A stretch of DNA of 64,000 nt from Haliotis cracherodii (Eukaryota): NCBI RefSeq assembly GCF_022045235.1, contig NW_027266271.1, positions 22,878,001 to 22,942,000 of the forward strand, in the 5' to 3' direction. Shown piece by piece: positions 14,801-56,966 of this stretch (position 1 is the first letter of the stretch; the number at the start of each line of letters is the position of its first letter). Below the pieces are notes generated by a model. It ran no database searches. It saw only the letters and a program-made list of their open reading frames with translations, and was not told where the DNA came from. The position numbers and the translations under genes were made by a program.

Positions 14801-16972
14801 TGGTGTGGCGTGTATCGCACGCGCATCTGCATCACACGTGCATCTGTATCACACCTCAAGTGTACATTGGACCTGTGTCGCACCTGTATCGCACCCGTAT
14901 GACAACTGTACATTTGGACCTCTGTCGCGCCCAGTTACCCTCTTGTAAGATCAAACACTAGTCAATCGGCCCGCCAGGCGTCCTGTACCAATCTCATTAA
15001 AACCAGATCTTAGTTCTCGCTATCGCTAAACAAAGATTTGAGGACATCCCATTACGGGTTACGTCAGAATGACCTTTCATCCAACCAATCAGATCGTCAC
15101 TTACCAGATCATGAAAGTGACAGTCGGAATGTGTTTTCTAATCACGCAACCTCGAAAACGTATTCAGAACGACAGTTACGGCCCGTACGACTGATTCCGT
15201 CAAAATAATCGCCTATCTCTCCTTTCATGGGAGAAACATTTGAACGAAAAAGTCGTTGCACAGTACGTGGGAAGAACTGCCATTCAATCTAAACCGTATA
15301 TTCGACATATTCCGGAATGTTCGTTTGTGCAGTTTTCAAATTTTTAATCGAGAACTGTGTCAACATAATTTTCAAGCGTAGTCTGAAACGGAAGCTTTCT
15401 AATTGGCTGATGTCGACTTCTTGTTAGTCATTTTAGTGGTCGGTCAAAGTTCGCGAAACCACTGGCCTTCGTATGGCAGATCTGAAAATAAACTTTGTAC
15501 TTAAGCGATCTACGTTGTGTTAACAATCCCTTATGTTTGTGAGGAACGCCCAAAGGTTGTGCGTCTGAGACGTTTACCACTTTGGTGAAACCCACAAGCA
15601 CCGAAAGAAGCAGATAAACCAAAAAGCATAAATCAGGCAGAATATGGACTCGAACCAACGGTCATAAGATTCTGGAACGACTAAAGGACGCAACTCTTAC
15701 GGCGCCGTAGATGATTTGTCCACCCGTACCCATTCATAAGGCCGTCATATAGCTGGAATATTGCTGAGTGCGACGTTAATCAACAAACAAACAAACCCAT
15801 CCATTAGGTGACTATATTTGTCGTAAAAGGCGACTAACGGGATCGGGTGTTCAGGGTCGCTGACTTGGTTGATGCACGTCATCGATCCCAATTGCGCGGA
15901 TCGATGCTCATGATATCAATCACTGGATTGTGTGGTCCAGATTTGATTATTTACAGACCGCCGTCATATCGCTGGAATGTTGCTGATTGCGGCGTTAACA
16001 ACAAACCAACCATCCAACCAACCATAAGGTATTAACGTTCTAGGCGATCATTTACAGCTTGCTCGGGACCCATGAGTAAGACGAAAACATTAATGTTTCA
16101 TTATGCTTGTATTCAACAGAACACATTTGTAGCAGCAATTGGGAACGGCTTTGATATGACGAGGATCAACCGCATCAACTTCGACCACATGGCCTTCGCC
16201 GTTGTGGGACATTGCATTCATAGAGACAGCTTCCTGATCCACCGAGGTGAGAACGCAAGACTTCAGCTTGAGACTATTATGGAATTACAGGCATTGCTAC
16301 AAGAACCTGAGGGGTAAAGGATGGGTAGTGGAGCGGGGTGGGTAGTGGAGCGGGATTGATAGTGGAGCGGGATGGGTAGTGGAGATGGGTAGTGGAGATG
16401 GAGATGGGTAGTGGAGCGGAATGGGTAGTGGAGATGGGTAGTGGAGCGGGATGGGTAGTGGAGCAGGGTGGGTAGTGGAGATGGAGATGGGTAGTGGAGA
16501 TGGTGATGGGTAGTGGAGCGGGATGGGTAGTGGAGATGGTGATGGGTAGTGGAGCGGGATGGTTAGTGGAGATGAGATGGGTTGTGGAGATGGAGATGTT
16601 TAGTGGAGATGGGTAGTGGAGACAGAGATGTTTAGTGGAGATGGGTACTGGAGATGGAGATGGGTAGTGGAGATGGTGATGGGTAGTGGAAAGGGAGATG
16701 GGAAGTGGAGATGGAGATGTTAAGTGGAGATCGGTAGTGGAGAGGGAGATGGGTAGTGGAGATGGAGATGTTTAGTGGAGAGGAGGATGGGTAGTGGAGA
16801 TGGAGATGGGTACTGAAGATAGAGATGTTTAGTGGAGATGGGTAGTGGAGATGGAGAAGGGTTGTGGAGATGGGTAGTGGAGATGCAGATGGGTTGTGGA
16901 GATGGAAATGTTAAGTGGAGAGGGAGATGGGTAGTGGAGATGGAGATGGGTAGTGGAGAGGGAGATCGGTAG

Positions 16973-17032
<60 letters not shown>

Positions 17033-20000
17033 TAGTGGAGATAGAGATGGGTAGTTGAGATAGAGATGGAGATGGGTGATGGAGATGGCGATGGAGATGG
17101 TGATGGGTAGTGGAAATGGAGATGGGTAGTGGAGAGGGAGATGGGAGGTGGAGAGGTAGATGGGTAGTGGAGAGGGAGATGGGTAGTGGAGATGGAGATG
17201 GGTGATGGAGATGGAGATGGAGATGGTGATGGGTAGTGGAAATGGAGATGGGTAGTGGAGAGGGAGATGGGTAGTGGAGAGAGAGAGATGGTAGTGGAGA
17301 GGGAGATGTTTAGTGGAGAGGGAGATGGGTGATGGAGATGGCGATGGAGATGGTGATGGGTAGTGGAAATGGAGATGGGTAGTGGAGAGGGAGATGGGAG
17401 GTGGAGAGGTAGATGGGTAGTGGAGATGGGTACTGGAGATAGAGATGGGTAGTGGAGATGGAGATGGGTGATGGAGATGGAGATGGGTAGTGGAGAGGGA
17501 GATGGGTAGTGGAGATGGAGATGGGTAGTGGAGAGGGAGATGGGTAGTGGAGATGGAGATGGGTAGTGGAGAGGGAGATGGGTAGTGGAGATGGGTACTG
17601 GAGATAGAGATGGGTAGTGGAGATGGAGATGGGTGATGGAGATAGAGATGGGTAGAGGAGAGGGAGATGGGTGATGGAGATGGTGATGGAGATGGTGATG
17701 GGTAGTGGAAATGGAGATGGTGATGGAGATGGTGATGGAGATGGTGATGGGTAGTGGAAATGGAGATATTTTGTGGAGATTGGTATTGGAGAGGGAGATG
17801 GGAAGTGGAGAGGTAGATGTTTAGTGGAGATGGGTACTGAAGATGGAGATGTTTAGTGGAGATGGGAAGTGGAGAGGTAGATGGGAAGTGGAGAGGTAGA
17901 TGGGTAGTGGAGATAGAGATGGGTAGTGGAGAGGGAGATGGGTAGTGGAGATGGAGATGGGTAGTGGAGATGCAGATGGGTAGTGGAGAGGGAGATGGGA
18001 AGTGGAGAGGGAGATGGGAAGTGGAGAGGTAGATGGGTAGTGGAGATAGAGATGGGTGGTGGAGAGGAAGATGGGAAGTGGAGATGGAGATGGGTAGTGG
18101 AGATAGAGACGGGAAGTGGAGATGGACATGGGTAGTGGAGAGGGAGATGGGAAGTGGAGAGGGAGATGGGAAGTGGAAATGGAGATGTTTAGAGGAGATG
18201 GGTAGTGGAGAGGGAGATGGGAAGTGGAGAGGGAGATGGGAAGTGGAGATGGAGATGTTTAGTGGAGAGGGAGATATGTAGTGGAGAGGGATATTGGTAG
18301 TGGGGATGGAGATGAGTAGTGGAGATAGAGATGGGTAGTGGAGAGGGAGATGGGAAGTGGAGATGGAGATGGATGATGGAGATAGAGATGGGTGGTGGAG
18401 AGGAAGATGGGAAGTGGAGATGGAGATGGGTAGTGGAGATAGAGACGGGAAGTGGAGATGGACATGGGTAGTGGAGAGGGAGATGGGAAGTGGAGAGGGA
18501 GATGGGAAGTGGAAATGGAGATGTTTAGAGGAGATGGGTAGTGGAGAGGGAGATGGGAAGTGGAGAGGGAGATGGGAAGTGGAAATGGAGATGTTTAGAG
18601 GAGATGGGTAGTGGAGAGGGATATTGGTAGTGGGGATGGAGATGAGTAGTGGAGATAGAGATGGGTAGTGGAGAGGGAGATGGGAAGTGGAGAGGGAGAT
18701 GGGTAGTGGAGATGGAGATGTTTAGAGGAGATGGGTAGTGGAGAGGGAGATGGGAAGTGGAGAGGGAGATGGGAAGTGGAAATGGAGATGTTTAGAGGAG
18801 ATGGGTAGTGGAGAGGGATATTGGTAGTGGGGATGGAGATGAGTAGTGGAGATAGAGATGGGTAGTGGAGAGGGAGATGGGAAGTGGAGAGGGAGATGGG
18901 TAGTGGAGATGGAGATGTTTAGTGGAGATGGGTACTGGAGATCGGCAGTGGAGAGGGATATGGGTAGTGGAATTGGAGATGTTTATTGGAGATGGAGATG
19001 GGTGGTGGAGATGGAGATGTTTAGTGGACATGTGTAGTGGAGAGGGAGATGGGTGGTGGAGATGGACATGTGTAGTGGAGAGGGAGATTGGTGGTGGAGA
19101 TGGACATGTGTAGTGGAGATGGACATGGGTAGTGGAGATGGACATGTGTAGTGGAGATGGACATGGGTAGTGGAGAGGGACATGTGTAGTGGAGATGGAC
19201 ATGTGTGGTGGAGAGGGAGATGGGTAGTGGAGATGGACATGTGTAGTGGAGATGGACATGGGTAGTGGAGAGGGAGATGGGTGGTGGAGATGGACATGTG
19301 TAGTGGAGATTGACATGGGTAGTGGAGAGGGAGATGGGTGGTGGAGATGGAGATGTTTAGTAGAGATGGAGATGGGTGGTGGAGATGGAGATGTTTAGTG
19401 GAGATGGACATGGGTAGTGGAGATGGACATGTGTAGTGGAGAGGGAGATGGGTGGTGGAGATGGACATGTGTAGTGGAGATGGACATGGGTAGTGGAGAG
19501 GGAGATGGGTAGTGGAGATGGACATGTGTAGTGGAGAGGGAGATGGGTGGTGGAGATGGACATGTGTAGTGGAGATTGACATGGGTAGTGGAGAGGGAGA
19601 TGGGTGGTGGAGATGGAGATGTTTAGTAGAGATGGAGATGGGTGGTGGAGATGGAGATGTTTAGTGGACATGTGTAGTGGAGAGGGAGATGGGTGATGGA
19701 GATGGAGATGTTTAGTGGAGATGGAGATGGGTAGTGGAGATGGAGATGGGTAGTGGAGATGGAGATGGGTGATGGAGATGGAGATGGGTAGTGGAGATGG
19801 AGATGGGTAGTGGAGATAGAGATGGGTGATGGAGATGGGTGATGGAGATGGAGATGGGTAGTGGAGATGGAGATGGGTAGTGGAGATGGAGATGGGTGAT
19901 GGAGATGGGTGATGGAGATGGAGATGGGTAGTGGAGATGGAGATGGGTGATGGAGATGGAGATGGGTGATGGAGATGGAGATGGGTAGTGGAGATGGAGA

Positions 20001-20438
20001 TGGGTGATGGAGATGGAGATGGGTGATGGAGATGGAGATGGGTAGTGGAGATGGAGATGGTGATGGAGATGGAGATGGGTAGTGGAGATGGAGATGGGTA
20101 GTGGAGATGGAGATGGGTGATGGAGATGGAGATGGGTGATGGAGATGGAGATGGGTAGTGGAGATGGAGATGGAGATGCTTTGTGGAGATGTGTAGTAGA
20201 GAGGGAGATGGGTAATGGAGATGGAGATGGGTAGTGGGTTGCAAAAGATGCTTAGAGGGAGTAATAGTTCTGATTGTAAGTGTTTATTATGAATATGGGG
20301 ATAGACTTGTGATGGAAAAGTAAATGTAACCAAATCATTCTATTATTTTCAGGGCATATGAACTTGAACGATCTCTCCAGCATTGGTCTCCAAGGCAGCA
20401 TAGCACCCAATGCCGAAGTTGTCCATGCCCACTCTTAA
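11889..20438 (+). CDS. Putative secreted ~145-aa protein, BRICHOS-like; 5 exons: 11889-11930, 13911-13991, 14685-14786, 16120-16246, 20353-20438
   Basis: Kozak ccaccATGG. GT-AG junctions keep one open frame (phases 0,0,0,1), 438 nt in total. Translation: MVRVPACLVLALMYVAAESDSSTQTRIIDYRNGLFYEDLGHNFLVLVMPDGCYFWHLTQNEISVGLSPGGFRHTENTFVAAIGNGFDMTRINRINFDHMAFAVVGHCIHRDSFLIHRGHMNLNDLSSIGLQGSIAPNAEVVHAHS. Hydrophobic N-terminus is signal-peptide-like. The family call is inference and the last exon is the least certain. Confidence 0.65.
12010..12272 (-). mobile_element. Family C element
   Basis: Near full-length reverse copy. Confidence 0.78.
12795..13035 (+). mobile_element. Non-tRNA SINE-like element, family C
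   Basis: Head CCGTGAAGATCCGGGGTAGAATAGGTCTTCAGCAACCC, tail CTAGAATATTGCTGAG..AAAC plus (AAAC)n. About 15 copies or fragments, e.g. 4541, 5265, 12010(-), 15825, 37495, 46125(-), 48156, 48955(-), 55137, 61408. Confidence 0.8.
13121..13686 (-). mobile_element. Composite family A SINE nested in a family C element
   Basis: 13-bp TSD GCTTTTCGTAAGA at 13108-13120 and 13687-13699. Confidence 0.8.
14240..14637. repeat. 21-bp minisatellite, ~19 copies
   Basis: Variants CGACTTCGACTCATGCTACAG and CGACTTCGACTCATGATGCGG; intronic, just upstream of exon 3 of the secreted-protein gene. Confidence 0.92.
16318..20237. repeat. ~3.9-kb purine-rich complex satellite (GGAGAT/GGGTAGT modules) with an embedded (GA)n
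   Basis: Recurring 13-, 19- and 25-bp combinations of GGAGAT and GGGTAGT; fills almost all of intron 4 of the secreted-protein gene. Confidence 0.95.
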
Positions 20439-38400: not shown

Positions 38401-41400
38401 TACCGAAACGTCGCCTTTTACAGTATTAAAGAAGTTGTTATCCATAAAAATTGTGTCTATCAGGTAAATATAAGTCCCAAAATATTGACCATCAAGGACA
38501 ACTTTATTTCTACCAACAGCTATGTAATAAGAACTGATGAGCTGTTGACTAGTGGTATTTAGCTGGTATCCTGAATTGGTTGCATATTATCTTTGTAAGT
38601 TTGTACATCTAACTTGGGATTTTTAACTGTTTAGATTATATATATATTGGCATGTCAAATTTCTGCCAGTTTTCACCATTAACTGAGTGGACCAGACAAC
38701 ATGCCAGAGGAAATCATCCCGAACCATTGTCAGACTTACTCAATGAGTCTCACACACTGATAAGGATGAAACATTGCTAATAGTTATGTGTTCATGTACA
38801 GTACACATTAAACGATAATGTATGAAATGCTGATGGTTTGTGAACATGTTCTTCCAGATGGTCAAGGATGCCAAGATCGCCATTTTGACCTGTCCCTTTG
38901 AGCCCCCAAAGCCCAAGACTAAGCACAAGCTTGATGTCAAGTCCGTAGAGGACTACAAGAAGCTTAGGGAATATGAAATAAAGAAGTTTGAAGATATGGT
39001 TCAGTCTGTAAGTATCCGATATCTGTATGGGGGCGGTGTGGTAGCCTAGTGGTTAAATTGTCCATCCAGCTGAAGGCCCGGGTTCGATTTCGATTTCCCA
39101 CATGAGTACAATGTGTGAAGCCCATTTCTGGTGTCCCTCACCGTGATATTGCTGGAATATTACAAAAAGTGGCATAAAACCACTCGCTCGCTGTATAGGT
39201 GGTGGAGTAGCCAAGTTGTAAAAGCATTTGCTCATCACACTGAACATGCTGAAGGCCTGGGTTGTATATCCCCATGTGGGTTAAGTGTGGACACATTTCT
39301 TGTCACCAGGGGTGATATTGCTGAAAAACTTGATATGTCAGTAATAACTCTGGGTATTTTGGTGTTACGTTAGGATGTTTCGATATATATTTGTGTTTTC
39401 CCAATGATGAAATTTGGAATTACCGATTGATTACGAATGAAACTAACCGAGCGGCAATATTTTCTGAGGGAATGGTAATGTTGACCTCTGCAAATGTGTA
39501 CGTTAGGCTTGGGTGGTATTGATATGAAGTTACTGCTTGCAGGTGAAGGACAAGGGCGCTAATCTAGTCATCTGCCAGTGGGGCTTTGATGATGAGGCCA
39601 ACCACCTGTTGCTGCAGAAGCAGTTACCAGCTGTTCGTTGGGTCGGTGGGCCTGAAATCGAGGTGATTATTACTCTCCATTCCCTGATAGAACCAGAGAT
39701 GGTGCTAATTTCATGCAATTGAAAAATTTGATATTTTAAAGTTGGTGTTACACAATGTATTCTCCAAGACATATTTGTTTGCAGGTTATGAGTTATAAAC
39801 AGGTTCATATTGAAAACATCTGTAGCCCCTTGAGTGAGTTTCTCTGTGATGAAAATTGGAATTACCGTTTGATAATAAATGAAACCACCCTAGCGGCATT
39901 TATTTCTGAGAGAAACTGGAGGCCAGTCTTAGAAATTCACTTCTAGGGGATGAGTGTGAACCTTATTTCAGAGGTCCTCAGTGTTTTTAGCTAGACCTGT
40001 GTGAACAATACAAAAATATTTGCTGTCTACATTATCTGTTGCTTTTATTCAGTTCCAATTTAGCATAATTGAAACATTGAGAACTGGTTGAGAATGATCA
40101 TCCTCAAATGCTACGAGGTCATTGAGGACTACCATCATTGGATATGTGCTTGTCAGCACAGTTTAAGTCTCAGGCTAGTGTAAATGTCAGTGACTGCCAT
40201 GCACAAGTTACAGCATCGCGACAGGTGTGAAATGAAGACAGGCATTGTATCCCTTTAGTACCTAAGGTTCCTTGCTATTCAAATACAGTTGGAGCAGCAA
40301 ACGTCCCTGAGATCACACCAGAATAAATAGGAGTATACTAGGGCTGCAACAAATACACTGAGGTGAATATGATTCATATCAAAAATATAGGGTAAAGAAT
40401 ACGAATATTAATTCACGAATACAACAAGTCAGCAGTTGTATTATTTTCAGTGAAACAATAGCAACATAAATTATTTGACATGGTTTGTTTATCATTTATA
40501 TATTATACATTTATATATTATACATTTATATACTGCACTTATCCAGGTACGAGTATCTGCTCAAATGCGACAATGACCAGTGACCACAATACTGTCAAAT
40601 TAAAAAGTATGAGAGTTGTAGAATAACGAATTCAATTCATGAATGGATACAGTTCTATTCATCAAATACGCGATTGAATCGAATTGAATTAGAATAATCA
40701 ATTTTCGAAATGGCCAAGAGGATCCCTTTTACATTGAGTAGGTTGCTTTGAGGGAGTAGACCTGTTTTAAATGTTTTCCATGAGTATGGCAATCATTATG
40801 ACGAAAGGATTTGTCCATTTAGTCGATGTTAAACATTCAACGTTTCTCTGTGATGAAAATTGGAATTACCGTTTGATACATATGAAACTACCCTAGCGGC
40901 ATTTATTTCTGAGAGAAACTGAATAAGGCTATGTTGGAGACCTGTTAGAAGTAAGTACTCATTTGTTGGACATGGATCTATGCACAGTGTCCTCAACAAC
41001 CTGAAAAGAAATTGCCCCGAAATGTATGATTCCAAGAGAATTATATCCATTGGCTGAAAACTTTTCAAATCCATAGTATTATTCCTTTACTTTCAGTGTG
41101 ATTTCTTTCGTATGTTATCTTTTACAAAAATAAGAAATGAAACAAACCTAGCTGCTTATTTTTCTGAGAGAAAGGAACCTGAAAGATTTTATCTTCACCA
41201 TTGTTTCTATGGTATTTTCATTTCTTGAATGATTGGACTGACACGGTTTGTGTAATTAGCAGCTTAATAACAAACAAATGAAGTTTTATAAAATCAATCT
41301 GGTTTCATTTCATTCGAACCATCCTGGAAATCAAGTTAGGATGTGGAAACATGAAAATAAAGAATGAGGTGTCACTCGTGATGAGATTGTAAGAAACATG

Positions 41401-44400
41401 CCACAACTTGTTAGTGTCAGCCATGATGTTGGCCAATACTAAATGGTTGAAACTATCCTGTGTCAGTAAATAATTAAGTCCAATTTTAATAGGGTAAGTT
41501 CAAGTTATATGCATTATAAACATTCATACATGTCATTCTTTATACTTATTGTTTAAGAAGAATTTCAAGTTTCTCTGTGATGAAAATTGGAATTACCGTT
41601 TGATAATCAATGAAACTACCCTAGCGGCATTTATTTTTGAGAGAAACTGAATAAGGCTATGTTGGAGACCTGTTAGAAGTAAGTACTCATTTGTTGGACA
41701 TGGATCTATGCACAATGTCCTGAACAAACTGAAAAGAAATTGCCCTGAATCATGTGATTCCAAGAGAATTATATCCATTGGCTGAAAACTTTTCAAATCC
41801 ATTGTATTATTTTCGTTGGCGGGGGATATAGAAATGGGCTTCGGACGTCACGTTTCGTTTCTGGAGCATAACTCATAAACCATTCAATATTTTTTCATCA
41901 AACTTTGCAGGTCTGTCATGTACATGCTGAACTGGTGTCTTTTGCTATTTAGAAATTTTAGAATTTTTTCTTTTTTTCGTTACCATGGCAGCAAGATGGA
42001 CTGAGGTTCCAAACTCATCTTTTTTTTACAATTTCCATGACAAGTTCCACCTCAGTTAAAAAAGGTTAGGGTTTGTTTAGATTTAATTATGTCATAAATT
42101 CTGCAACAGGGGCGGGGGATATAGCCACGTTGGTGGCAAACTCTTGTTCCTTTACTTTCTGTGTGATTTCTTCCATATGTTATCTTTTACAAAAATAAGA
42201 AATGAAACAAACCTAGCTGCTTATTTTTCTGGGAGAAAGGAACCTGAACGATTTTATTTTCACCATTGTTTCTATTTCCCCTGATATTGAACAAGTTTGA
42301 CATTTTCAACAATGTAGGATCTGTAAGCAAATTAACAACCAAAGTAGTAACAATTTAAAATCTAGGTTTGTTAATTACATAATGAAAACCAAGTCAGGCA
42401 TAAGTTAGAATCATGTAAAATGAAGAGGTTTTGATCCTGCGAAAATATCATTAACGATATTATTGATTTTCTGTTGGCAAATGCATTAAGCTCTGTTTGA
42501 GAGAAAATGTACATTGAGAAAGCTAGCAGTGCGAAGAAAGGTTCCCATTTGAATGAAGTAGATTCTGTTAAGAAGCATGAAGACACAGCTGGTTTCACAT
42601 GTTACATTTGGGTAAATAGGTGTTATGCAGTAAATGAGATTCTTTCTCAAATTTAATGTAACTGCCATGTAATTAACAGTTTACGCACGTTCTGATTTTC
42701 AATTACTTGTTAAAGATGCAGTTTCTCTGTGATGAAAATTGGAATTACCGTTTGATAATAAATGAAACTACCCTAGCGGCATATATTTCTGAGAGAAAAT
42801 AGCATTAAAGATTGTTTTTCGATTTAGCAGAATTTTGTGCATTTTCATTTCTTGAATGATTGGGCTGACAAGGTTTGTGTAGTTAGCAGCTTAATAACAA
42901 GCAAATAAAGGTTTATAAAATCAATCTGGTTTCATTTCGTTTGAACCATCCTGGAAATCAAGTTTGGATGTGGAAACATGAAAATAAAGAATGAGGTGTC
43001 ATTCTTGATGAGATTGTAAGAAACATGCCACAACTTGTTAGTGTCCACCATGATGTTGGCAATACTAAATGGTTGAAACTATCCTGTGTCAGTGAATTAT
43101 TAAGTCCAATTTTAATAGGGTAAGTTCAAGTTATATGCATGATAAACATTCATACATGTCATTCTTTAAACTTATTGTTTAAGAAGTATATCAGGTTTCT
43201 CTGTGATGAAAATTGGAATTACCGTTTGATAATGCATGAAACTACCCTAGCGGCATTAATTTCTGAGAGAACTTGAATAAGGCTCTGTTGGAGACCTTTT
43301 GGAAATATTACTTCAAAGTATGGAGACAGTGCCTGGAATCTTAATGATTGTATAAATAGAACATCTATCCATTTTTGAAAATAGATCTATGCACACAATC
43401 GCCTGAACAGACTAAACAAGAAAATGCCCAGAATCCTGTCATTCAAAGAATAATGCATGGGCTGAAGACTTGCACATATGTCCAGTGCTTAAGCAGTACA
43501 GTTTTCAAATCCATCAGTGGTATTCCTTTACTTATTGTATCATTTCCTACATACTTTATCATGTTTTACAGTTGATCGCCATAGCAACTGGAGGAAGAAT
43601 CGTTCCACGGTTTGAAGAGCTGACCACTGAGAAGCTGGGAAGTGCTGGCATCGTGAAGGAGTTGAACTTTGGAACAACCAAAGAGAGAATGTTGGTCATC
43701 GAGGAGTGCAAGAACTCGAGAGCCGTCACCATCTTCATCAGGGGAGGCAATAAGATGGTGAGTGTCAAGTTGTTGGGATTGTGAGAGTTCAGAGATTTAT
43801 CTAGGAATCCAAATTAAGTACACTTGCCAGCCGAATTAGGAGAAATCGTTCAAAATTTGATCTATTTTTTTTTTCAGTTTCCTTGTTTTAGAGGTATTTT
43901 ACATTGCATTCAGTGCAATAATGTTAAACTAATCTGAAGTACTATTGTCAGTGAAATTCAAGTTGCCTTACAAAGCCATAACACTTATTAATATAAAAGC
44001 ATGAAATGGTAAATGTTATGTTGCAGTTTGGATTTTATTTCATTGATATTTGCTGCATACTCTGGGCCAAATATCAGCACCTAATCAGGTTGAGATAAAT
44101 TCCCAATTCATGTTCTGGTAAATGTTTTGTATTGTAATTAATCCAACACTGTTTATATCAGTCAACATGTCTTTGTCATTTCTAATCTGAGTACGTCTCC
44201 TCTTTTGGCATGTCAAATTTCTGCCAGTTTTCACCATTAACTGAGTGGACCAGACAACATGCCAGATGAAATCATCCCGAACCATTGTCAGACTTACTCA
44301 ATGAGTCTCACACACTGATAAGGATGAAACATTGACTAACCTTGATTTCAAAGTAGTTTGTCAGATGTTGATTGTATGACAAAAAGGTCAGAAAGTACTT

Positions 44401-47400
44401 GTAATACTTTGTTTTTTATGTTTGTGTAGATTGTGGAGGAAGCTAAGCGAAGTCTTCATGATGCCTTGTGTGTAATCCGAAACATCGTCCGAGACAACCG
44501 TGTTGTGTATGGAGGTGGTGCTCCCGAGATCGCCTGCTCACTAGCTGTGTCTAAAGCTGCAGATAAGGTAGGGCTAGCTAGACCTTACCGTTGTCCTGAA
44601 ATTGTGTATTTGGTGTAGAAATTACGGTTGACACAAATTTTATGGTTTCAGACATAGATGGACTAATGTTTATAGAATCTAATTGTGCAGGTTGATCAGT
44701 TTCATCAAAGGAAGGTTGAGTGTTAATTATGATGAAGCTGATTATGATCAAATTTTCTGTTGCAGTGCATTTCTTGCTTGTTTGGAGAATTATTTTTTTT
44801 TAATAATTGTTTTGTTTTTTGTAGATTTCCACTCTTGAGCAATATGCAGTGCGTGGTTTCTCTGAAGCTTTGGAAAGCATTCCTTTAGCATTAGCAGAAA
44901 ACAGTGGTCAGGCCCCAATCCACACGCTAGCCGATGTGAAATCTCGACAAGTCAAGGAGAAGAACCCTAGGCTTGGAATCGACTGTCTCCTAAGAGGAAC
45001 AAATGGTATGTTGGTAAATAAGTTGCGACAAGTTGAACACCAGATTGGACTAGAAAGGCCTTTATACCAGATGGTATAATTTGCCTTAAGTCCCCGGCTC
45101 AAACATGTTTTCCTGGCCAACTTGCGGACCAATTTGAAAGTATAATCTTTATACTAAGTGCAATGGCGGATATAATCAGATAATCTTGACCAGTCTGGTT
45201 ATCAACTTGCAAAGTAAGCACATTGTTGCACGATCTGGATAAAAGTACACATATTTTAATGCAAGTGTCTTAGAAAGTTAATCATGTTGCATTTATTGTT
45301 AGACCAGGATGCATACACTTTGCAGAAACATGTAAAGTGCAATACAGTTTTGGGTTCAGGGTCTGTTAGGAAACATTATGGGACAGTCTGTAGCTCTGTG
45401 TAGCGACAAGTCAATATTAAATTCGTTTATAGGAAGCAGCACAGATAAAGTTACCACAGTTTTGGTCCCACTACCAACAAATGAGTCAGATCACGCGTTA
45501 ATGTAACCACCCAATCCCCAGTGGAGTCGCATATTTCACTACATTTTACCACGCCTAGTTGATGTTTGGGTTCACGTTTAAAGTTATGAACAGGTTGACA
45601 CTTGAAACATCAGTAGGGCCCTGAGTGAATTTCTCTGTGATGAAAATTGGAATTACCGTTTGATAATGCATGAAACAACCCTAGCGGCATTTATTTCTGA
45701 GAGAAACGTGGAGGCCCACCTTAAATATTTCTTTCTATGACTGGTCCCGAGGACTAGTGTCAACCTTATTTCACTGATCCTAAGTATTTGTTGCTAGACC
45801 TGCTTGAACAATACAGTGTTTACGGTGTTTACATTTTCTGTTGGTTTTATTCAGTTCCAATTTCACACAATTGAAGAATTGAGAGCTGGTTCCAAATTAT
45901 AGTGCTTAATGCTACACGTCTATGAGCACTACTATCAATGGATTTTTACTTGTCAGCTCAATTAAATAACCATGGGCTAGCGTGAATTTCGAAGGCTGGC
46001 ATGCACAAGTTACGACATCTCGACAGGTGTGAAATGACCTTCAGCATTGTATCCCTTTAGTACATAATGTTTATTGCTTATCAGATACAGTTGGAACTGC
46101 ATACTTCCGGGAGATCACACCTGAATGTTTGTTGTTTAATGCCGCACTCTGCAATATTCCAGCTATATGACTGCGGTCTGTAAATAATCGAGTCTGGGCC
46201 AGACAATCCAGATCATGAGCATAGATCCACGCAATTGGGATATGATGACATGCATCAACCAAGTCAGCAGGCTGTCCACCCGATCCCGTTGGTCGCCTCT
46301 TACGGCAAGCATGGGTTTCTGTCACACATTCATTATGAATAATAACTATAGGTATACTACTCCTTTTGATAGGGAGATTTTTTTTATCTTTCCAAGAGAC
46401 ACAGAACAACATCTGATTTAGGGATTTCCCTATCGAAAGTTTAAGTTGTGTATATTAGCAAACGGTGAACTTAAGATTTTCATATATTCAAATGACCAAA
46501 AGATAATGTTTACATAGTTTGCCTTGGGGAGAGTGGGGCTCTTTGCAAATGTTTTCCATGTGTATGGCAATAATTATGACATTGCAATAAAAATTTGCAG
46601 GAAAGATAAGGTTTACAATGTCCAATTGGTATTTGCATTAATTCCTTTTGGTTAGAACATTAATGATATGTAAAGTTATATTCATCCATGGGACATGTGG
46701 AAAAATCATAACGACCAGTACCATAAATGTTTGGGAAATCAAAGGTTTTGTCCATAAAGTTGATGTTGGAACAAAAACGTTTCTCCATGATGAAAATTGG
46801 AATTACCGTTTGATACATATGAAACTATCCTTGCGGCATTTATTTCTGAGAGAAACAAAAGTGGAAGTATTGAATTTATCGGTTCACGTAATTCACAAAC
46901 TTTGAACATGTTGAAGCTATTGAAGTGTATTACCTCATTCCTCTATACATGTGTCCTGATTACAGTTGATTTGTCATCTCGACAAGATACCCATGCTGAT
47001 GGGTGACGCCAAAGGGATAAACATCCAAGACCTGCATCTAAAAAAATGCACAAAATGTTCATAATACTAGTCTCTGATCATTACTGAATCAATCAGTTTG
47101 TTTTTGGTCAATGAGTTCAGTTTTACTTTTATTTAATTCACAGAATGTTAGGTTGTTCTAATGATAGTAATAATCATGTTAAATTAGCATTGTTGCAAAA
47201 TATCCATTAAAAATCATTGTTTGACAGTCCAATGTCTCCATGATGAAAATTGAAATTACCATTTGATACCAATGAAACTGTCCTAGCTGCATTTATTTCT
47301 GAGAGAAATTTATTCAAATGGAAGAATTAACACTTATCAGATGGTACACAAAGTACATGATCCAGACTACCAGTTGTCCCACCTTCATTTTTTGTGGAAG

Positions 47401-49948
47401 ATTCGGTGGCTGAGTGGGTCAGATTGCTGACTGTGTCAGATGGGACTCAACCAATAGAAAAAGTACTAGAATTTTGTACTTGCAGTCCGAAACTTATATA
47501 ACTGACTAATGATTTAATGAATAATTAATGAGGGAAACAAATGTGAAAGATTGTCTTTCAATTTAACATTGCCTTGTGTATGGAGGATTGGACTGACAAT
47601 GTTTTAGTAATGAGTAGCTTAATGACAGCAAAGTTGTAAAAGATCAAAATTTGGTTTTCATTTGAAGCTTGGGTTTTTGATACATTAAGCTATAGGATGC
47701 GGGTTGAACATTCATTCTTGATAATATTGTAAGAAACATGATGATGATGCAACAACTTATGTCATTAGCCATGATGGCTTATACAAAATGGTTAAAACGA
47801 TCCTTTGTCAGTGAATAATCAATGTCATTCAATTTCAATATGCAAAGTTCACCTCGTATACATAATTAACATTCTTACATGGCCATTAGGCCATTCTCCT
47901 AAATTCCTTATTAAAAAGAATGTGAAGTTTCTCTGTGATGAAAATTGGAATTACCGTTTGATAATGCATGAAACTACCCTAGCGGCATTTATTTCTGAGA
48001 GAAATGGAATATAAAAGATTTTATTTCCACCATTGTTTCCATTTACCGTGACAGTGAACAAGTTGCCATTTCAACAATGTATGAGCTGTGAACAGCTTTA
48101 TAACAACCAAAGTAGTAACCATTTAATATCTAGTTATATTAATTATATAATGACACCCGTGAAGATCTGGGGTAGAATAGGTCTTCAGCAACCCATGCTT
48201 GCCGTAAAAGGTGACAATGCTTGTCTTAAGAGGCGACTAACAGGGTCGGTTGGTAAGGCTCGCTGACTTAGTTGATGCATGTCATCGTATCCCAATTGAG
48301 TAGATCGATGCTCATGATATCAATCAATGGTTTTTTCGGTCCAGATATGATTATTTACAGACTGCCATCATATGGGTGGAATAGTGCTGAGTGCGGGGTT
48401 AAACAACAAACAAAACAAAATTATACAATGAAAACCATGTCCGACATAAGTCAAGGCAACTGGTATTGATTCAAGCTGAAATATATATTGGAAAACTTAA
48501 GGATTCATCATGATCCTTGATTATGAACAACTTGCTTCTGGCTACAATGAGCTCTGTTCATCCTCAGAGAAAATGTTCATTGAGAATACTATCCGTGCAG
48601 TGTGAGGAAAGAGTCTCGTTCGAATTAAGTAGACTCTAAGCATAGTGTAGACTCAGCAGATTTCAAATGATGTATTCTGACAGCTTTTCTGTACACTTGT
48701 CAAAACTAATAAGTTTCTCCATGATGAAAATTGGAATTACCGTTTGATATTTATGAAACAATCCTAGCGGCAAAACTTTCTGAGAGAAACTTGGCTATTG
48801 AATTTTGGGTTGTATTTTTTTGAAAGAATTCACTTAAGCAGAAGAACGAACACATTATCAGTGATCATGTCCAACTACATTTCCCACAAATAAAACCTTC
48901 CCTTGATTCAATGTTGGGAGTAAAGTAACAGTGTGGCCAGCCACCGTGACTGTGTTTACACTCAGCAATATTCTGGCAGCTACATGACGGCAGTCTGTAA
49001 ATAATAGTCTGGACCAGACAATCCAGTGATTGACGTAATGAGCATCGATCCATGCAATTGGGATATGATGACATGCATCAACCAAGTCAGCAAGCCTGAC
49101 CATCCAATCCTGTTAGTCGCCTCTTACAACAAGCATTGTCACTTTTTACGACAATCATGGGTTGGTGAAGACCTATTCTAACGCGGATCTTCACGGGTCC
49201 TGTGACTGTACCGAACTTGGGGGATTGTGCGAGTTGACGAGTAGCTTTAAGTTTCCCTGCATTATAAAACACGTCGAGTTATAACTTATTCGCTGCGGTT
49301 TCTTACAGCCCTAAGGTTACTTTACCTTTAATTGTTTCTCTGTGATGAAAATGGAATTACCGTTTGATATTGCATGAAACTACCCTAGCGGCATTTATTT
49401 CTGAGAGAAACTAAGTCTGACGCATCAAAATGATGTCATCCTTTTCGTGGTAATAAACTGGTAGCAAATGTATGAAATGTGTATGATTGAAAGAGAAACG
49501 TTTTGCTTACATACTTGTGCTGCAAGGTTTAAATTATCATCTTTGTTGTCTGGTAAATACATCCTTCCCTGATCATGCTGACCGATAAATCAACTTTTGA
49601 AGAGATAAGTATGCATATTGAGAATATTCAGTTGACTGGGCAAGAACTTTTGTGAAAGTCTGGTAGCCTGAGTAATGGAACCGGTACAAAAAACACTAAG
49701 TTTGTAATCTTGCTGTCCCCATTTCTATGATCTTAAATGTTTACTAAGAAACATGGACACATTTAAGAAGTCTGTTATTCAGACGGTGGTTTTCATGATC
49801 ATGTCAATCTCTTTTTGTATTTTCAGATATGAAGGAACAGAATGTGATTGAGACCCTAACTGCCAAGAAGCAGCAGCTGCTATTAGCCACACAACTGGTT
49901 AGGATGATCCTCAAGATCGACGACATCAGAGCACCAAATGAAATGTGA
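32465..49948 (+). CDS. CCT5: T-complex protein 1 subunit epsilon (CCT5), 539 aa; exons 32465-32569, 33237-33462, 35728-35926, 36260-36452, 38858-39007, 39543-39662, 43572-43757, 44430-44567, 44825-45005, 49827-49948
   Basis: Motifs [80 protein letters not shown]. All introns GT-AG; 1620 nt in frame. Confidence 0.97.
37108..37235 (+). ncRNA. Box H/ACA snoRNA (SNORA15-like 5' hairpin), copy 1 (CCT5 intron 4)
   Basis: Hairpin GGCATGT..ACATGCC, H box AGAGGA, hairpin TCATCC..GGATGA, ACA plus 3 nt; pockets antisense to 18S. Confidence 0.8.
37751..38030 (+). mobile_element. Family A SINE in CCT5 intron 4
   Basis: Full-length copy with B box GGTTCGAATCCC. Confidence 0.8.
38648..38776 (+). ncRNA. 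Box H/ACA snoRNA, copy 2 (intron 4)
   Basis: Near-identical to copy 1 in unrelated flanks; ends 81 nt before the 3' splice site. Confidence 0.82.
39029..39190 (+). mobile_element. Family B SINE in CCT5 intron 5
   Basis: A/B boxes and shared tail. Confidence 0.75.
39398..39472 (+). ncRNA. Box C/D snoRNA, SNORD65/snR77-like, copy 1 (CCT5 intron 5)
   Basis: C box ATGATGA, guide TGGAATTACCG, D' TTGA, D CTGA, terminal stem TTCCC/GGGAA; ends 70 nt before the 3' splice site. Confidence 0.85.
39839..39915 (+). ncRNA. Box C/D snoRNA SNORD65-like, copy 2 (intron 6)
   Basis: GTGATGA, TGGAATTACCG-t-TTGA, CTGA; stem TTTCTC/GAGAAA. Confidence 0.8.
40843..40918 (+). ncRNA. Box C/D snoRNA SNORD65-like, copy 3 (intron 6)
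   Basis: Same boxes, guide and terminal stem. Confidence 0.8.
41570..41646 (+). ncRNA. Box C/D snoRNA SNORD65-like, copy 4 (intron 6); D box mutated to TTGA
   Basis: Guide intact; D box CTGA changed to TTGA. Confidence 0.65.
42722..42798 (+). ncRNA. Box C/D snoRNA SNORD65-like, copy 5 (intron 6)
   Basis: Same boxes, guide and stem. Confidence 0.8.
43196..43271 (+). ncRNA. Box C/D snoRNA SNORD65-like, copy 6 (intron 6)
   Basis: Same boxes, guide and stem. Confidence 0.8.
44206..44334 (+). ncRNA. Box H/ACA snoRNA, copy 3 (intron 7)
   Basis: Near-identical; H box AGATGA differs only at an N position of ANANNA. Confidence 0.82.
45630..45706 (+). ncRNA. Box C/D snoRNA SNORD65-like, copy 7 (intron 9)
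   Basis: Same boxes, guide and stem. Confidence 0.8.
46780..46855 (+). ncRNA. Box C/D snoRNA SNORD65-like, copy 8 (intron 9)
   Basis: ATGATGA, intact guide, CTGA, stem. Confidence 0.8.
47235..47308 (+). pseudogene. Degenerate SNORD65-like copy 9 (intron 9)
   Basis: Boxes intact but the guide has two substitutions (TGAAATTACCA). Confidence 0.65.
47928..48004 (+). ncRNA. Box C/D snoRNA SNORD65-like, copy 10 (intron 9)
   Basis: Same boxes, guide and stem. Confidence 0.8.
48156..48420 (+). mobile_element. Family C element in CCT5 intron 9
   Basis: Full-length copy; an inverted copy lies at 48955-49198. Confidence 0.78.
48714..48789 (+). ncRNA. Box C/D snoRNA SNORD65-like, copy 11 (intron 9)
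   Basis: ATGATGA, intact guide, CTGA, stem. Confidence 0.8.
49335..49410 (+). ncRNA. Box C/D snoRNA SNORD65-like, copy 12 (intron 9)
   Basis: Same boxes, guide and stem. Confidence 0.8.
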
Positions 49949-55136: not shown

Positions 55137-55400
55137 ACCCATGAAGATTCCGGGGTAGATTAGATCTTCAGCAACCCATGCTTGCTGTAAAAGGCGGCTA
55201 TGCTTGTCGTAAAAGGCGACTAACGGGATCGGGTGGTCAGGCTCGCTGACTTGGTTGATGCATGTCATCGATCCCAATTGCGTGGATCGATGCTCATGAT
55301 ATTAATCACTGGATTGTCTGGTCCAGACTCGATTATTTACAGACCGCCGTCATATAGCTGGAATATTGCTGACTGCGGCGTTAAACAACAAACCAAACCA
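55137..55400 (+). mobile_element. Family C element
   Basis: Full-length copy followed by a 5'-truncated second copy (~55440-55610). Confidence 0.8.
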
Positions 55401-56966
55401 AAAATACATGCATGGCATTGGTTCTCGTACCCAGCTCGGTTCTTCAGGCTCGCTGACTTGGTTGATGCATGTCATCGTATCTCATTTGCGCGGATGATGC
55501 CCACGATATCAGTCACTGGATTGTCTGGTCCCGAGTTTTTACTGACCGTCGCCATATAGGTGGACTTTTGCTGGGTGCGGCGTTAAACAACAAATAAACA
55601 AACAAACAAATCTAATGACATCGATGTTGATTTTTTAATTCAGACAAGATGTCAAAATTAAATCCCTCTTGTCATTTGTTACTCGACTGCTCCCTTTTTA
55701 TATGCATGTGCTACCCATAAGTCTAGAGTGACCGTGTGTAACAACTGTCCGATATTTGCGACCCTCAACGCTTATTGGTCAGTTGAATCTATAATACGTG
55801 TATATTACACTATACATGGTGTAGAGCAAACATTATTTCTTAAATAATCTCTACTTCATTGTTGAGCAAAATACGATATGACGACATCCATTTTCATGAC
55901 GTCACACATTGATTATATGACGTCAACTGAACAATAGGTTACGTTCAGCGGTGTTTATCTGTAGGGATATTTCATACGTTTTTCATCATCTCCTCTCTTA
56001 AAATGTCAATGAGTAATATACAGAAGAGCCTATTCGATATCCTGACTTACGGATTATTTCGCTAAAGGCTCGGGACTTCCACCATTTACGCAAGTATTCC
56101 GTATCCTAGAAGCTGATTGGTTATTCTCTAAAATAGTGTTGGCTATAACAACAGTCATGCATGGACGAATATAGACACTGCGTTCAGTCGAAACGTAACA
56201 GTTAACACGCTCCCGTTTGTCAAACTCCAGGCATGTGATATATAATCTAATTCGAGTCCACAATTAATGTTTGGAGGACAAATCTTTCATAATGCCCATG
56301 GAAAACTGTTTCCGATGTAACAATTTCCTGTAATTTAGATATGGTTTACAAATGCAATAGTTAGCGGTTCATATTATTGTGACGATACTGTCAATCATCA
56401 AAGGGTGATTACCTTGCATAAAATCATCACAAATCAACATTAGCCCTTCGTAATCGTGCGTCAGCGACCATTTTAATATAGCCCACTCTTCGCTATCATA
56501 TGCTAACAAGCCTTTTCACTCCTGTAATGACCCACTGTTTACTATCCAACGAGCGTTTCCACAACCCAGAATAACATTGCCCAATACATAATTCAACATC
56601 TGAACAAGTCGTTATAGTTGCAACCGGCGCAATGTATTGCAACCTATGTTTAAATTGTACTAAATTAGTTTTTTACTTAATGACCCTTTATCGATTTTGA
56701 TATTTTCTCAACAGTTAAGATCATATTTCGTTTCGACACAAATGCTTCATCGAACGTGTGTCGCGGGTTGGCGGATCCGTCGCTGAAAGGGCTCTCACAC
56801 TTCATTGATTCGGTCCATAGCAACGCATATAAACACCCCTTGGATATGGCAAGGACTTACATGACGGCTTGGACATCGGAGGGATAACATCGGGGTTTGT
56901 GAGTCTCGGATATGTATATGACAGTTTTGAAGGGTTAATTTACAGTGAACAAGCACTAGATCCACC

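What the first reader, a model, noticed from the sequence alone, without database searches (positions are those of the whole stretch)
39398..49410. Twelve-copy box C/D snoRNA array in CCT5 introns, 5-6 copies per intron, aimed at the ribosomal decoding-centre loop
Seen: a ~76-nt unit occurs 12 times, all in sense to CCT5 (1 in intron 5, 5 in intron 6, 6 in intron 9). The unit is TTTCTC stem, RTGATGA, TGGAATTACCG, D' TTGA, CTGA, GAGAAA. Boxes and guide are almost invariant while the duplicated flanks have clearly diverged. Known: the guide is antisense to the universal 18S CGGUAAUUCCA. The D'+5 rule points to the U next to decoding G626 (human Um627, yeast Um578; SNORD65/snR77). Vertebrate hosts normally carry one snoRNA per intron because release is exonucleolytic from the debranched lariat. 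Inference: this is either a polycistronic intronic snoRNA system needing internal cleavage, or one in which only one copy matures per transcript. Either way it would couple snoRNA dosage to a chaperonin gene.
Basis: partly seen in the sequence, partly recalled or inferred. Interest (0 to 1): 0.9.

Follow-up and report, generated by a model that had tools for sequence, protein, structure and literature searches.

The report
Twelve-copy methylation-guide snoRNA in abalone CCT5
An abalone chaperonin gene (CCT5) carries twelve copies of one small guide RNA in three of its introns; the guide is predicted to direct methylation of a conserved uridine in the ribosome's decoding centre, and this is a real, selected but fairly ordinary "intronic snoRNA cluster" of a kind already known in flies and plants.

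Summary
Twelve ~78-nt box C/D units lie in sense in CCT5 introns: one in intron 5, five in intron 6 and six in intron 9. Ten are intact. One has a UUGA D box, and one has two guide mutations. Two further relics lie in intron 6.

The 11-nt guide matches the genome's own 18S perfectly. It places U591 at the D'+5 position, the equivalent of yeast Um578 and human Um627 (snR77/SNORD65 clan). In the 1.18-Gb assembly the unit occurs only at this locus.

Old duplicates between introns 6 and 9 are 95-97% identical inside the unit. Their co-duplicated flanks are only 66-75% identical, so the units are under selection.

The animal is an abalone (from earlier scan notes, not tested here), so the vertebrate "one snoRNA per intron" rule is the wrong yardstick. 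Intronic snoRNA clusters are documented in rice and Drosophila, and human TCP1 already hosts snoRNAs.

The scan noted this same stretch in other windows (s1-829838, s1-829649) and a similar multi-copy cluster elsewhere in this genome (s1-826285).

Verdict: a new member of a known kind, of moderate interest.

The parts
39398..39472 (+). Unit i5_1 in intron 5. It has C box ATGATGA, an intact guide, D' TTGA, D CTGA and a 5-bp stem TTCCC/GGGAA. Its 3' end lies about 67-70 nt upstream of the 3' splice site.
39838..39916 (+). Unit i6_1 in intron 6; intact, with a 7-bp terminal stem.
40842..40919 (+). Unit i6_2 in intron 6; intact, of the short-loop subtype.
41090..41175 (+). Relic copy. C', D box and 3' stem are kept, but the C box has decayed to TGTGATTT and there is no 18S guide.
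41569..41647 (+). Unit i6_3 in intron 6. The guide is intact but the D box has mutated from CTGA to TTGA.
42150..42240 (+). Second relic copy, 95% identical to the first relic. Its D box has decayed to CTGG.
42721..42799 (+). Unit i6_4 in intron 6; intact.
43195..43273 (+). Unit i6_5 in intron 6. Boxes and guide are intact; the stem is shortened to 5 bp. It lies 297 nt upstream of the 3' splice site.
45629..45707 (+). Unit i9_1 in intron 9; intact. It is the old duplicate partner of i6_1.
46779..46856 (+). Unit i9_2 in intron 9; intact. It is the partner of i6_2.
47232..47309 (+). Unit i9_3 in intron 9. The boxes are kept but the guide has two G-to-A changes; a likely pseudogene.
47927..48005 (+). 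Unit i9_4 in intron 9; intact. It is the partner of i6_3, i6_4 and i6_5.
48713..48790 (+). Unit i9_5 in intron 9; intact.
49334..49411 (+). Unit i9_6 in intron 9; intact. The spacer between C box and guide is 1 nt shorter. It lies 414 nt upstream of the 3' splice site.
32465..49948 (+). Host gene CCT5 (T-complex protein 1 subunit epsilon) with 10 coding exons. Exons near the array: E5 38858-39007, E6 39543-39662, E7 43572-43757, E8 44430-44567, E9 44825-45005, E10 49826-49948.
   Evidence: TIGR02343 is the best family for every exon; GT-AG boundaries

Best explanation
This is a locally amplified family of box C/D snoRNA genes, the abalone counterpart of SNORD65 / snR77 / snoR77Y. It lies in the sense strand of three introns of the housekeeping chaperonin gene CCT5, and it is the only source of this guide in the genome.

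Proposed mechanism:
1. Each unit is transcribed as part of the CCT5 pre-mRNA.
2. The C and D boxes, clamped by a 5-7-bp terminal stem, nucleate a C/D snoRNP.
3. The 11-nt element upstream of D' pairs with 18S 588-598 and directs 2'-O-methylation of U591 in helix 18 of the decoding centre.

The array arose by segmental duplication within intron 6 and by copying of intron-6 material into intron 9. It evolves by birth and death: about ten copies are intact and under purifying selection, one has a D-box variant, one has a decayed guide, and two are relics.

Inferred, not shown:
- The intron-5 copy sits at the classical distance from the 3' splice site for splicing-coupled assembly.
- The arrayed copies, which have longer stems, assemble independently of position.
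- They are separated when unprotected AT-rich spacer RNA is nicked and then trimmed by exonucleases back to each snoRNP.
- One host transcript therefore yields several snoRNAs.
For: Anatomy:
- All units have C box RUGAUGA, D' UUGA, C' AUGAAAC, D box CUGA and a terminal stem that is 95% paired, with two compensatory pair changes.
- Folding shows only the terminal stem as stable, as expected for C/D snoRNAs.

Target:
- The guide has a perfect 11-nt complement at 588-598 of the genome's own 18S. One spacer base precedes D', so U591 is the 5th paired base.
- The Rfam snoR77Y consensus has the same spacing.
- This U is Um578 (snR77), Um627 (SNORD65/HBII-135) and Um580 (snoR77Y), clan CL00057, in helix 18 of the decoding centre.

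Selection:
- In old duplicate pairs the unit is 95-97.5% identical and the co-duplicated flanks 66-75%. Fisher p ranges from 6e-5 to 1e-10.
- Identity drops sharply at the unit borders.

Locus restriction:
- BLAST and a pattern search of the 1.18-Gb assembly find the unit only here, always on the host strand.

Host:
- CCT5 is confirmed exon by exon.

Precedent:
- Intronic snoRNA clusters are described in rice and Drosophila.
- A metagenomic RPS8 gene has two copies of the same snoRNA type in one intron.
Against:
- The run index lists only runs whose kind is guessed, holding 10-34% of the sampled words of intron 6.
- No Rfam family reaches its gathering score. The best is snoR77Y at 24-30 bits against a threshold of 52.
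- D' (UUGA) and C' are degenerate.
- Recent duplicates are no better conserved in the unit than in the flanks (92-95% against 90-94%), so some young copies may be redundant or decaying.
- Gene conversion confined to the units could mimic part of the selection signal.
- The release mechanism is pure inference.
Confidence: 0.82

Rival explanations
1. Only one copy, or very few, matures per transcript or overall. Candidates are the canonically placed intron-5 copy or the copies at the ends of each array. The internal copies would be silent duplicates that have not yet decayed.
For: - Only i5_1 lies at the classical ~70-nt distance from a 3' splice site. The last array copies lie 297 and 414 nt away.
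- Young duplicates show no excess conservation of the unit.
- Four of fourteen copies are visibly damaged.
Against: - If only one member of each old pair were constrained, unit identity should lie about midway between the flank value and 100%, near 83-87%. It is 95-97.5% in four independent pair comparisons between introns 6 and 9.
- The pairs involve internal as well as terminal copies.
Confidence: 0.15
2. The main stable products are long snoRNA-ended intron fragments (sno-lncRNAs) spanning neighbouring units, as in mammalian introns with two snoRNAs. Monomeric snoRNAs would come mostly from the intron-5 copy.
For: - In mammals two snoRNAs in one intron protect the intervening RNA from exonucleases.
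- Here 5-6 snoRNP-forming units sit 450-1150 nt apart in one intron.
Against: - The spacers evolve freely (66-75% identity) and no conserved spacer element was seen.
- Organisms with intronic clusters (rice, Drosophila) are reported to produce individual snoRNAs.
- There is no RNA evidence either way.
Confidence: 0.1
3. The unit is a snoRNA-derived mobile element or a satellite-like repeat that happens to lie in this gene, with no guide function.
For: It has many copies with decayed members, and snoRNA-derived retroposons exist in other animals.
Against: - There is no copy anywhere else in 1.18 Gb.
- All copies are in host sense.
- Flanks are co-duplicated, with no poly(A) tails.
- The five 2-mismatch pattern hits elsewhere belong to an unrelated dispersed repeat without a D box or stem.
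- Guide and boxes are selectively conserved.
Confidence: 0.02

Closest known systems
SNORD65 (HBII-135, RF00571) / yeast snR77 (RF01181) / plant snoR77Y (RF01178), Rfam clan CL00057
   Same: - It is a box C/D guide whose D'-linked antisense element pairs with the 18S helix-18 sequence CGGUAAUUCCA and selects the same uridine (Um627 / Um578 / Um580).
- The guide and the one-base spacing to D' are the same as in the snoR77Y consensus.
   Different: - It scores below every Rfam gathering threshold: 24-30 bits against 52.
- D' is UUGA rather than CUGA.
- The 3' half carries a conserved GCGGCA motif where other orthologs have UGGCUG or a GCACCAG element.
- The host is CCT5. Metagenomic orthologs sit in RPS8 and RPL3.
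Intronic snoRNA gene clusters of rice and Drosophila melanogaster (Huang et al. 2004 J Mol Biol; 2005 RNA, as cited in PMC5932544 and PMC2780460)
   Same: Several snoRNA genes, often tandem paralogues, lie inside one intron of a host gene in host sense. This departs from the vertebrate and yeast one-per-intron rule.
   Different: - Here 5 and 6 copies of a single box C/D guide occupy two introns of a protein-coding chaperonin gene in a mollusc.
- From memory, not checked here: the Drosophila clusters are mainly H/ACA.
- Processing is unstudied here.
Mammalian sno-lncRNA-forming introns (for example the PWS region, and SNHG29 with SNORD49A/B)
   Same: There is more than one C/D snoRNA in a single intron, so exonucleolytic trimming alone cannot separate them.
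   Different: Whether long snoRNA-ended RNAs accumulate here is unknown. The copy number per intron is much higher, and all units carry the same rRNA guide.
Human TCP1 (CCT1) as host of SNORA20 and SNORA29
   Same: A cytosolic chaperonin subunit gene serves as an intronic snoRNA host. This CCT5 gene also carries three near-identical H/ACA copies.
   Different: It is a different subunit with different snoRNAs, and the human gene has one snoRNA per intron.

Membership tests
Box C/D snoRNA (2'-O-methylation guide class) | C box RUGAUGA near the 5' end and D box CUGA near the 3' end | tested here: met
   The C box is present in all 12 units. D is CUGA in 11 and UUGA in i6_3.
Box C/D snoRNA (2'-O-methylation guide class) | A terminal stem that brings the C and D boxes together | tested here: met
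   The stem is 5-7 bp, 95% of cells are paired, and two pairs show changes on both sides: U-A to C-G in i5_1 and G-C to A-U in i9_3.
Box C/D snoRNA (2'-O-methylation guide class) | An antisense element of at least 10 nt next to D or D', with the target base at the 5th paired position | tested here: met
   The guide is a perfect 11-nt complement to the genome's own 18S 588-598. One spacer base precedes D', so the target is U591.
Box C/D snoRNA (2'-O-methylation guide class) | Accumulates as a stable ~70-90-nt RNA bound by fibrillarin, NOP56, NOP58 and SNU13 | not testable with these tools
The run index gives only runs of guessed kind that hold 10-34% of intron-6 words.
SNORD65 / snR77 / snoR77Y (Rfam clan CL00057) | Guides methylation of the helix-18 uridine (Um627 / Um578 / Um580) | tested here: met
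   This is met at the sequence level only. The guide and D' spacing are the same as in the snoR77Y consensus, and the target context is identical. Methylation itself was not tested.
SNORD65 / snR77 / snoR77Y (Rfam clan CL00057) | The covariance-model score reaches the family's gathering threshold | tested here: not met
   There is no hit at gathering. snoR77Y is the best model of the clan at 24-30 bits against 52. I therefore call it a functional counterpart by guide, not a curated Rfam member.
Intronic snoRNA gene cluster (rice / Drosophila type) | Two or more snoRNA genes within one intron, on the host strand | tested here: met
   Five units lie in intron 6 and six in intron 9, all on the + strand like CCT5.
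Intronic snoRNA gene cluster (rice / Drosophila type) | Expressed from the host pre-mRNA, with no promoter of their own, and processed into individual snoRNAs | tested here: inconclusive
   No motif is shared in the 80 nt upstream of the units beyond co-duplicated pairs. There are no RNA data.
snoRNA-derived retroposon (snoRT / snoRTE) | Dispersed copies in either orientation, with poly(A) tail and target-site duplications | tested here: not met
   All copies lie in one 10-kb stretch on the host strand, and there are none elsewhere in 1.18 Gb. Flanks are co-duplicated rather than A-tailed.

The most novel reading that the evidence does not exclude
Abalone introns that carry five or six identical-guide box C/D snoRNAs may be true animal polycistrons. 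Most copies would mature from a single excised intron through obligatory internal (endonucleolytic) cleavage, possibly with nested snoRNA-ended long RNAs as intermediates or by-products. Local amplification would then be the way this lineage raises the dose of a decoding-centre methylation guide above one per host transcript.
Probability: 0.35. Interest if true: 0.6.

Novelty: new member of a known kind. Interest (0 to 1): 0.38.

Why it matters
- It gives a clean, well-delimited natural test case for how several snoRNPs are released from one animal intron. All copies carry the same guide, most can be told apart by a few loop bases (i6_5 and i9_4 share one variant), and they are the only genes for that guide in the genome.
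- The host of this ancient snoRNA family moves between lineages: CCT5 here, RPS8 and RPL3 in metagenomic relatives.
- Together with another multi-copy cluster noted in this genome, it suggests that intronic snoRNA clusters may be common in molluscs, where snoRNA organisation is hardly described.
- It does not reveal a new kind of system.

Tried and rejected
- **Rfam at gathering thresholds.** There was no hit. Only sub-threshold hits appeared, with snoR77Y, snoU83B and SNORD34 at 19-31 bits.
- **A second, D-linked guide.** No ungapped duplex of at least 9 bp without heavy G-U content was found against the genome's own 18S, ITS/5.8S region or 28S. RNAduplex of the C'-D segment shows nothing special next to the target. 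The conserved GCGGCA motif therefore remains unexplained.
- **Transposon reading.** Rejected.
- **Whole-segment tandem duplication from intron 6 to intron 9.** No remnants of exons 7-9 lie in intron 9, so intron material alone was copied.
- **Expression.**
  - The look-up of sequencing runs returned 23 holders from 9 studies. None is on record as RNA, and they hold 10-34% of intron-6 words. This is uninterpretable without laying reads.
Those places were sent to no search tool afterwards, and I worked beside them.
- **Orthologous CCT5 introns.**
  - None of the 120 metagenomic loci that carry the snoRNA motif contains a CCT5 exon.
- **Spliced model.** Exons were searched one by one.
- **Drosophila paper.** The Drosophila RNA 2005 paper is not held in the library.
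Full report

Yes.
- The 11-nt word TGGAATTACCG occurs exactly 11 times between 39415 and 49362, always on the + strand. About one match at up to one mismatch is expected by chance, and none of 100 shuffles reached the observed count.
- A twelfth copy at 47232 carries two G-to-A changes in the guide.
- Aligned, all twelve share one plan: a 5' stem GTTTCTC, C box RTGATGA, four spacer bases, the guide, one base, TTGA (D'), a variable 5-6-nt loop, ATGAAAC (C'), a 21-nt spacer, CTGA (D), and the 3' stem GAGAAAC.
- Two further relics in intron 6, at 41090-41175 and about 42150-42240, keep C', the D box and the 3' stem but have lost the C box and the guide.

**2. The host gene**

- Ten stop-free stretches on the + strand each score best against TIGR02343, T-complex protein 1 subunit epsilon. 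Together they cover profile positions 2-531 of 532.
- I searched the exons one at a time.
- With GT-AG boundaries read off, intron 5 is 39008-39542, intron 6 is 39663-43571 and intron 9 is 45006-49825.
- Earlier notes of this scan identify the genome as an abalone. I did not test that independently. The window is contig C8 of a 1.18-Gb assembly.

**3. What the unit is**

- The anatomy is that of a box C/D snoRNA.
- Single-sequence folding finds only the terminal stem as a stable element, which is normal for this class.
- Across the 12 copies the 7-bp stem is 95% paired. Two pairs changed on both sides: U-A to C-G in the intron-5 copy and G-C to A-U in copy i9_3.
- I fetched the genome's own rDNA. 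The guide is a perfect 11-nt complement of 18S positions 588-598, CGGUAAUUCCA.
- Because one base separates the guide from D', the fifth paired base is U591, the U in CGG-U-AAUUCCA.
- The literature assigns this helix-18 uridine of the decoding centre to snR77 (yeast Um578), HBII-135/SNORD65 (human Um627) and snoR77Y (Arabidopsis Um580). All three belong to Rfam clan CL00057, which is traceable to the last eukaryotic common ancestor (PMC2794176; PMC3511168; bioRxiv 10.64898/2026.05.13.724956).
- Rfam gives no hit at gathering thresholds.
- With relaxed thresholds, snoR77Y is the best model of that clan for all 11 guide-intact copies, at 24-30 bits against a threshold of 52. Its consensus shows the same guide and the same one-base spacing to D'.
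- I therefore call the unit a functional counterpart of that clan by guide, not a curated Rfam member.
- No target was found for the region upstream of box D. Its conserved GCGGCA motif is unexplained.

**4. Is it selected, or just repeated DNA?**

The copies lie inside larger duplicated blocks, which gives an internal control.

| Pair | Unit identity | Flank identity | Fisher p |
|---|---|---|---|
| i6_1 ~ i9_1 | 75/79 (95%) | 352/470 (75%) | 1.5e-5 |
| i6_3 ~ i9_4 | 75/79 (95%) | 248/376 (66%) | 1.7e-8 |
| i6_5 ~ i9_4 | 77/79 (97.5%) | 247/375 (66%) | 1.4e-10 |
| i6_4 ~ i9_4 | 75/79 (95%) | 31/46 (67%) | 6.3e-5 |
| i6_2 ~ i6_3 (young) | 95% | 94% | 1 |
| i6_3 ~ i6_5 (young) | 92% | 90% | 0.68 |

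- In the old pairs between introns 6 and 9, identity falls abruptly at the unit borders.
- If only one member of each old pair were constrained, unit identity should be near 83-87%. The observed 95-97.5% implies constraint on both members, or gene conversion confined to the unit.
- In the young pairs within intron 6, unit and flank are about equally similar. Several young copies carry lesions, such as the D-box C-to-U change in i6_3 and the shortened stem in i6_5.
- The picture is birth-and-death evolution of a selected multi-copy family.

**5. Is it a transposon?**

No.
- BLAST of a unit against the whole assembly returns 11 hits, all in this locus and all on the + strand.
- A pattern for C box + guide + D' with up to 2 mismatches returns 11 units, including the divergent intron-5 copy that BLAST missed. 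The two searches together recover all 12. It also returns five hits elsewhere.
- Those five lie in an unrelated dispersed repeat that has no D box or stem.
- So these are the only genes for this guide in the genome.

**6. History**

- Two subtypes can be told apart by the D'-C' loop. In order along the gene, intron 6 reads long, short, relic, long, relic, long, long. Intron 9 reads long, short, short (decayed), long, short, long.
- The first ~550 nt of the two arrays align at an offset of about 5.8 kb. Later blocks match at other offsets.
- This agrees in part with the scan's other note that intron 9 is a collinear duplicate of intron 6 (s1-829838), but later rearrangement and further local duplication are evident.
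- Intron 9 holds no remnant of exons 7-9, so intron material alone was copied.

**7. How it probably works (inferred)**

- The intron-5 copy ends about 67-70 nt before the 3' splice site. From established knowledge of vertebrate intronic C/D snoRNAs (Hirose and Steitz 2001, recalled and not re-read here), that is the favoured distance for splicing-coupled snoRNP assembly. This copy has the shortest stem, 5 bp.
- The arrayed copies lie hundreds to thousands of bases from the splice sites, and most have 6-7-bp stems. This fits the position-independent assembly mode aided by stronger terminal stems.
- After splicing and debranching, exonucleases from the intron ends can free only the outer borders of an array. 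Separating the inner units needs at least one cut in each unprotected, 65% A+T spacer, followed by trimming to the snoRNP borders.
- Otherwise snoRNA-ended long RNAs would persist, as in mammalian two-snoRNA introns (PMC11028025).
- No flanking element is conserved across all copies that could mark a dedicated cleavage site or a promoter.

**8. Comparison with what is known**

[quoted passage not shown] 2004 and 2005 as cited in PMC5932544). It is a named category in a recent review.
- A pattern scan of metagenome contigs found at least 120 loci with the same C box + guide + D' arrangement. Eight of them have two matches in one contig.
- None contains a CCT5 exon.
- In L103 two diverged copies lie together in the last intron of an RPS8 gene. 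In L070 one copy lies in an RPL3 intron.
- So the family changes host between lineages, and two-per-intron occurs elsewhere.
- Chaperonin genes as hosts are also not new: human TCP1 hosts SNORA29 and SNORA20 (PMC4824147).
- This same CCT5 gene carries three 96-99% identical H/ACA units as well.
- Another first-stage note reports a four-copy SNORD2-type cluster in RPL18 introns of this genome (not checked).

**9. What could not be done**

Those places were not sent to any search tool afterwards.
- The run index listed 23 holders from 9 studies with 10-34% of the sampled words of intron 6. Their kind is only guessed and none is on record as RNA. This neither shows nor excludes expression.

**10. 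Verdict**

- The organisation is a striking but known kind: an intronic snoRNA cluster in a non-vertebrate animal.
- The mechanistic question of multi-copy release remains open and is testable with ordinary RNA experiments.
- Novelty: a new member of a known kind. Interest is moderate.

Noticed in passing
window 37106-37235, 38647-38776 (both intron 4) and 44205-44334 (intron 7), + strand: Three 96-99% identical ~130-nt H/ACA-type units lie in the same CCT5 gene. Each has two hairpins, an AGAUGA hinge and ACA 3 nt from the end, and folds with z = -3.3. The best Rfam hit is SNORA42 at 33.9 bits, below its threshold of 70. Another first-stage note (s1-829649) covers them.
   Followed up: partly
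window 16380-20237: A G-rich minisatellite of about 210 copies of a 19-nt unit (TGGAGATGGGTAGTGGAGA) at 78% match. It produces a GC skew of 0.8-0.95 over 4 kb.
   Followed up: partly
units, C'-to-D spacer (for example 39889-39898 in i6_1): A GCGGCA motif about 10 nt upstream of box D is conserved in all intact copies, including the divergent intron-5 copy. Metagenomic orthologs carry UGGCUG or GCACCAG at the same place; the latter is complementary to 18S CUGGUGC just upstream of the target. No convincing pairing partner was found for the abalone motif.
   Followed up: partly
L103 (metagenome contig JAAUYG010065189.1), minus strand, units at reverse-complement positions ~5209 and ~5935: Two diverged copies of the same snoRNA type lie together in the last intron of a ribosomal protein S8 gene of an unidentified animal-like eukaryote. 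In L070 one copy sits in an RPL3 intron.
   Followed up: partly
window 37494-37642 and 48182-48333; also 55224-55556: A dispersed repeat occurs in intron 4, intron 9 and downstream of the gene; its translation reads like ...SQLRGSM.M...G..GPD.IIYR.PSY.WN...CGVKQQTK. It is probably a transposable-element fragment.
   Followed up: no
G000 C2:15409620, C5:34369067, C12:19012899, C23:3056349, C67:40392690 (L022-L027): A dispersed repeat family contains TGATGACGGGAATTACCGCTTGA, a chance look-alike of the C box + guide + D' pattern. It has no D box or terminal stem.
   Followed up: partly
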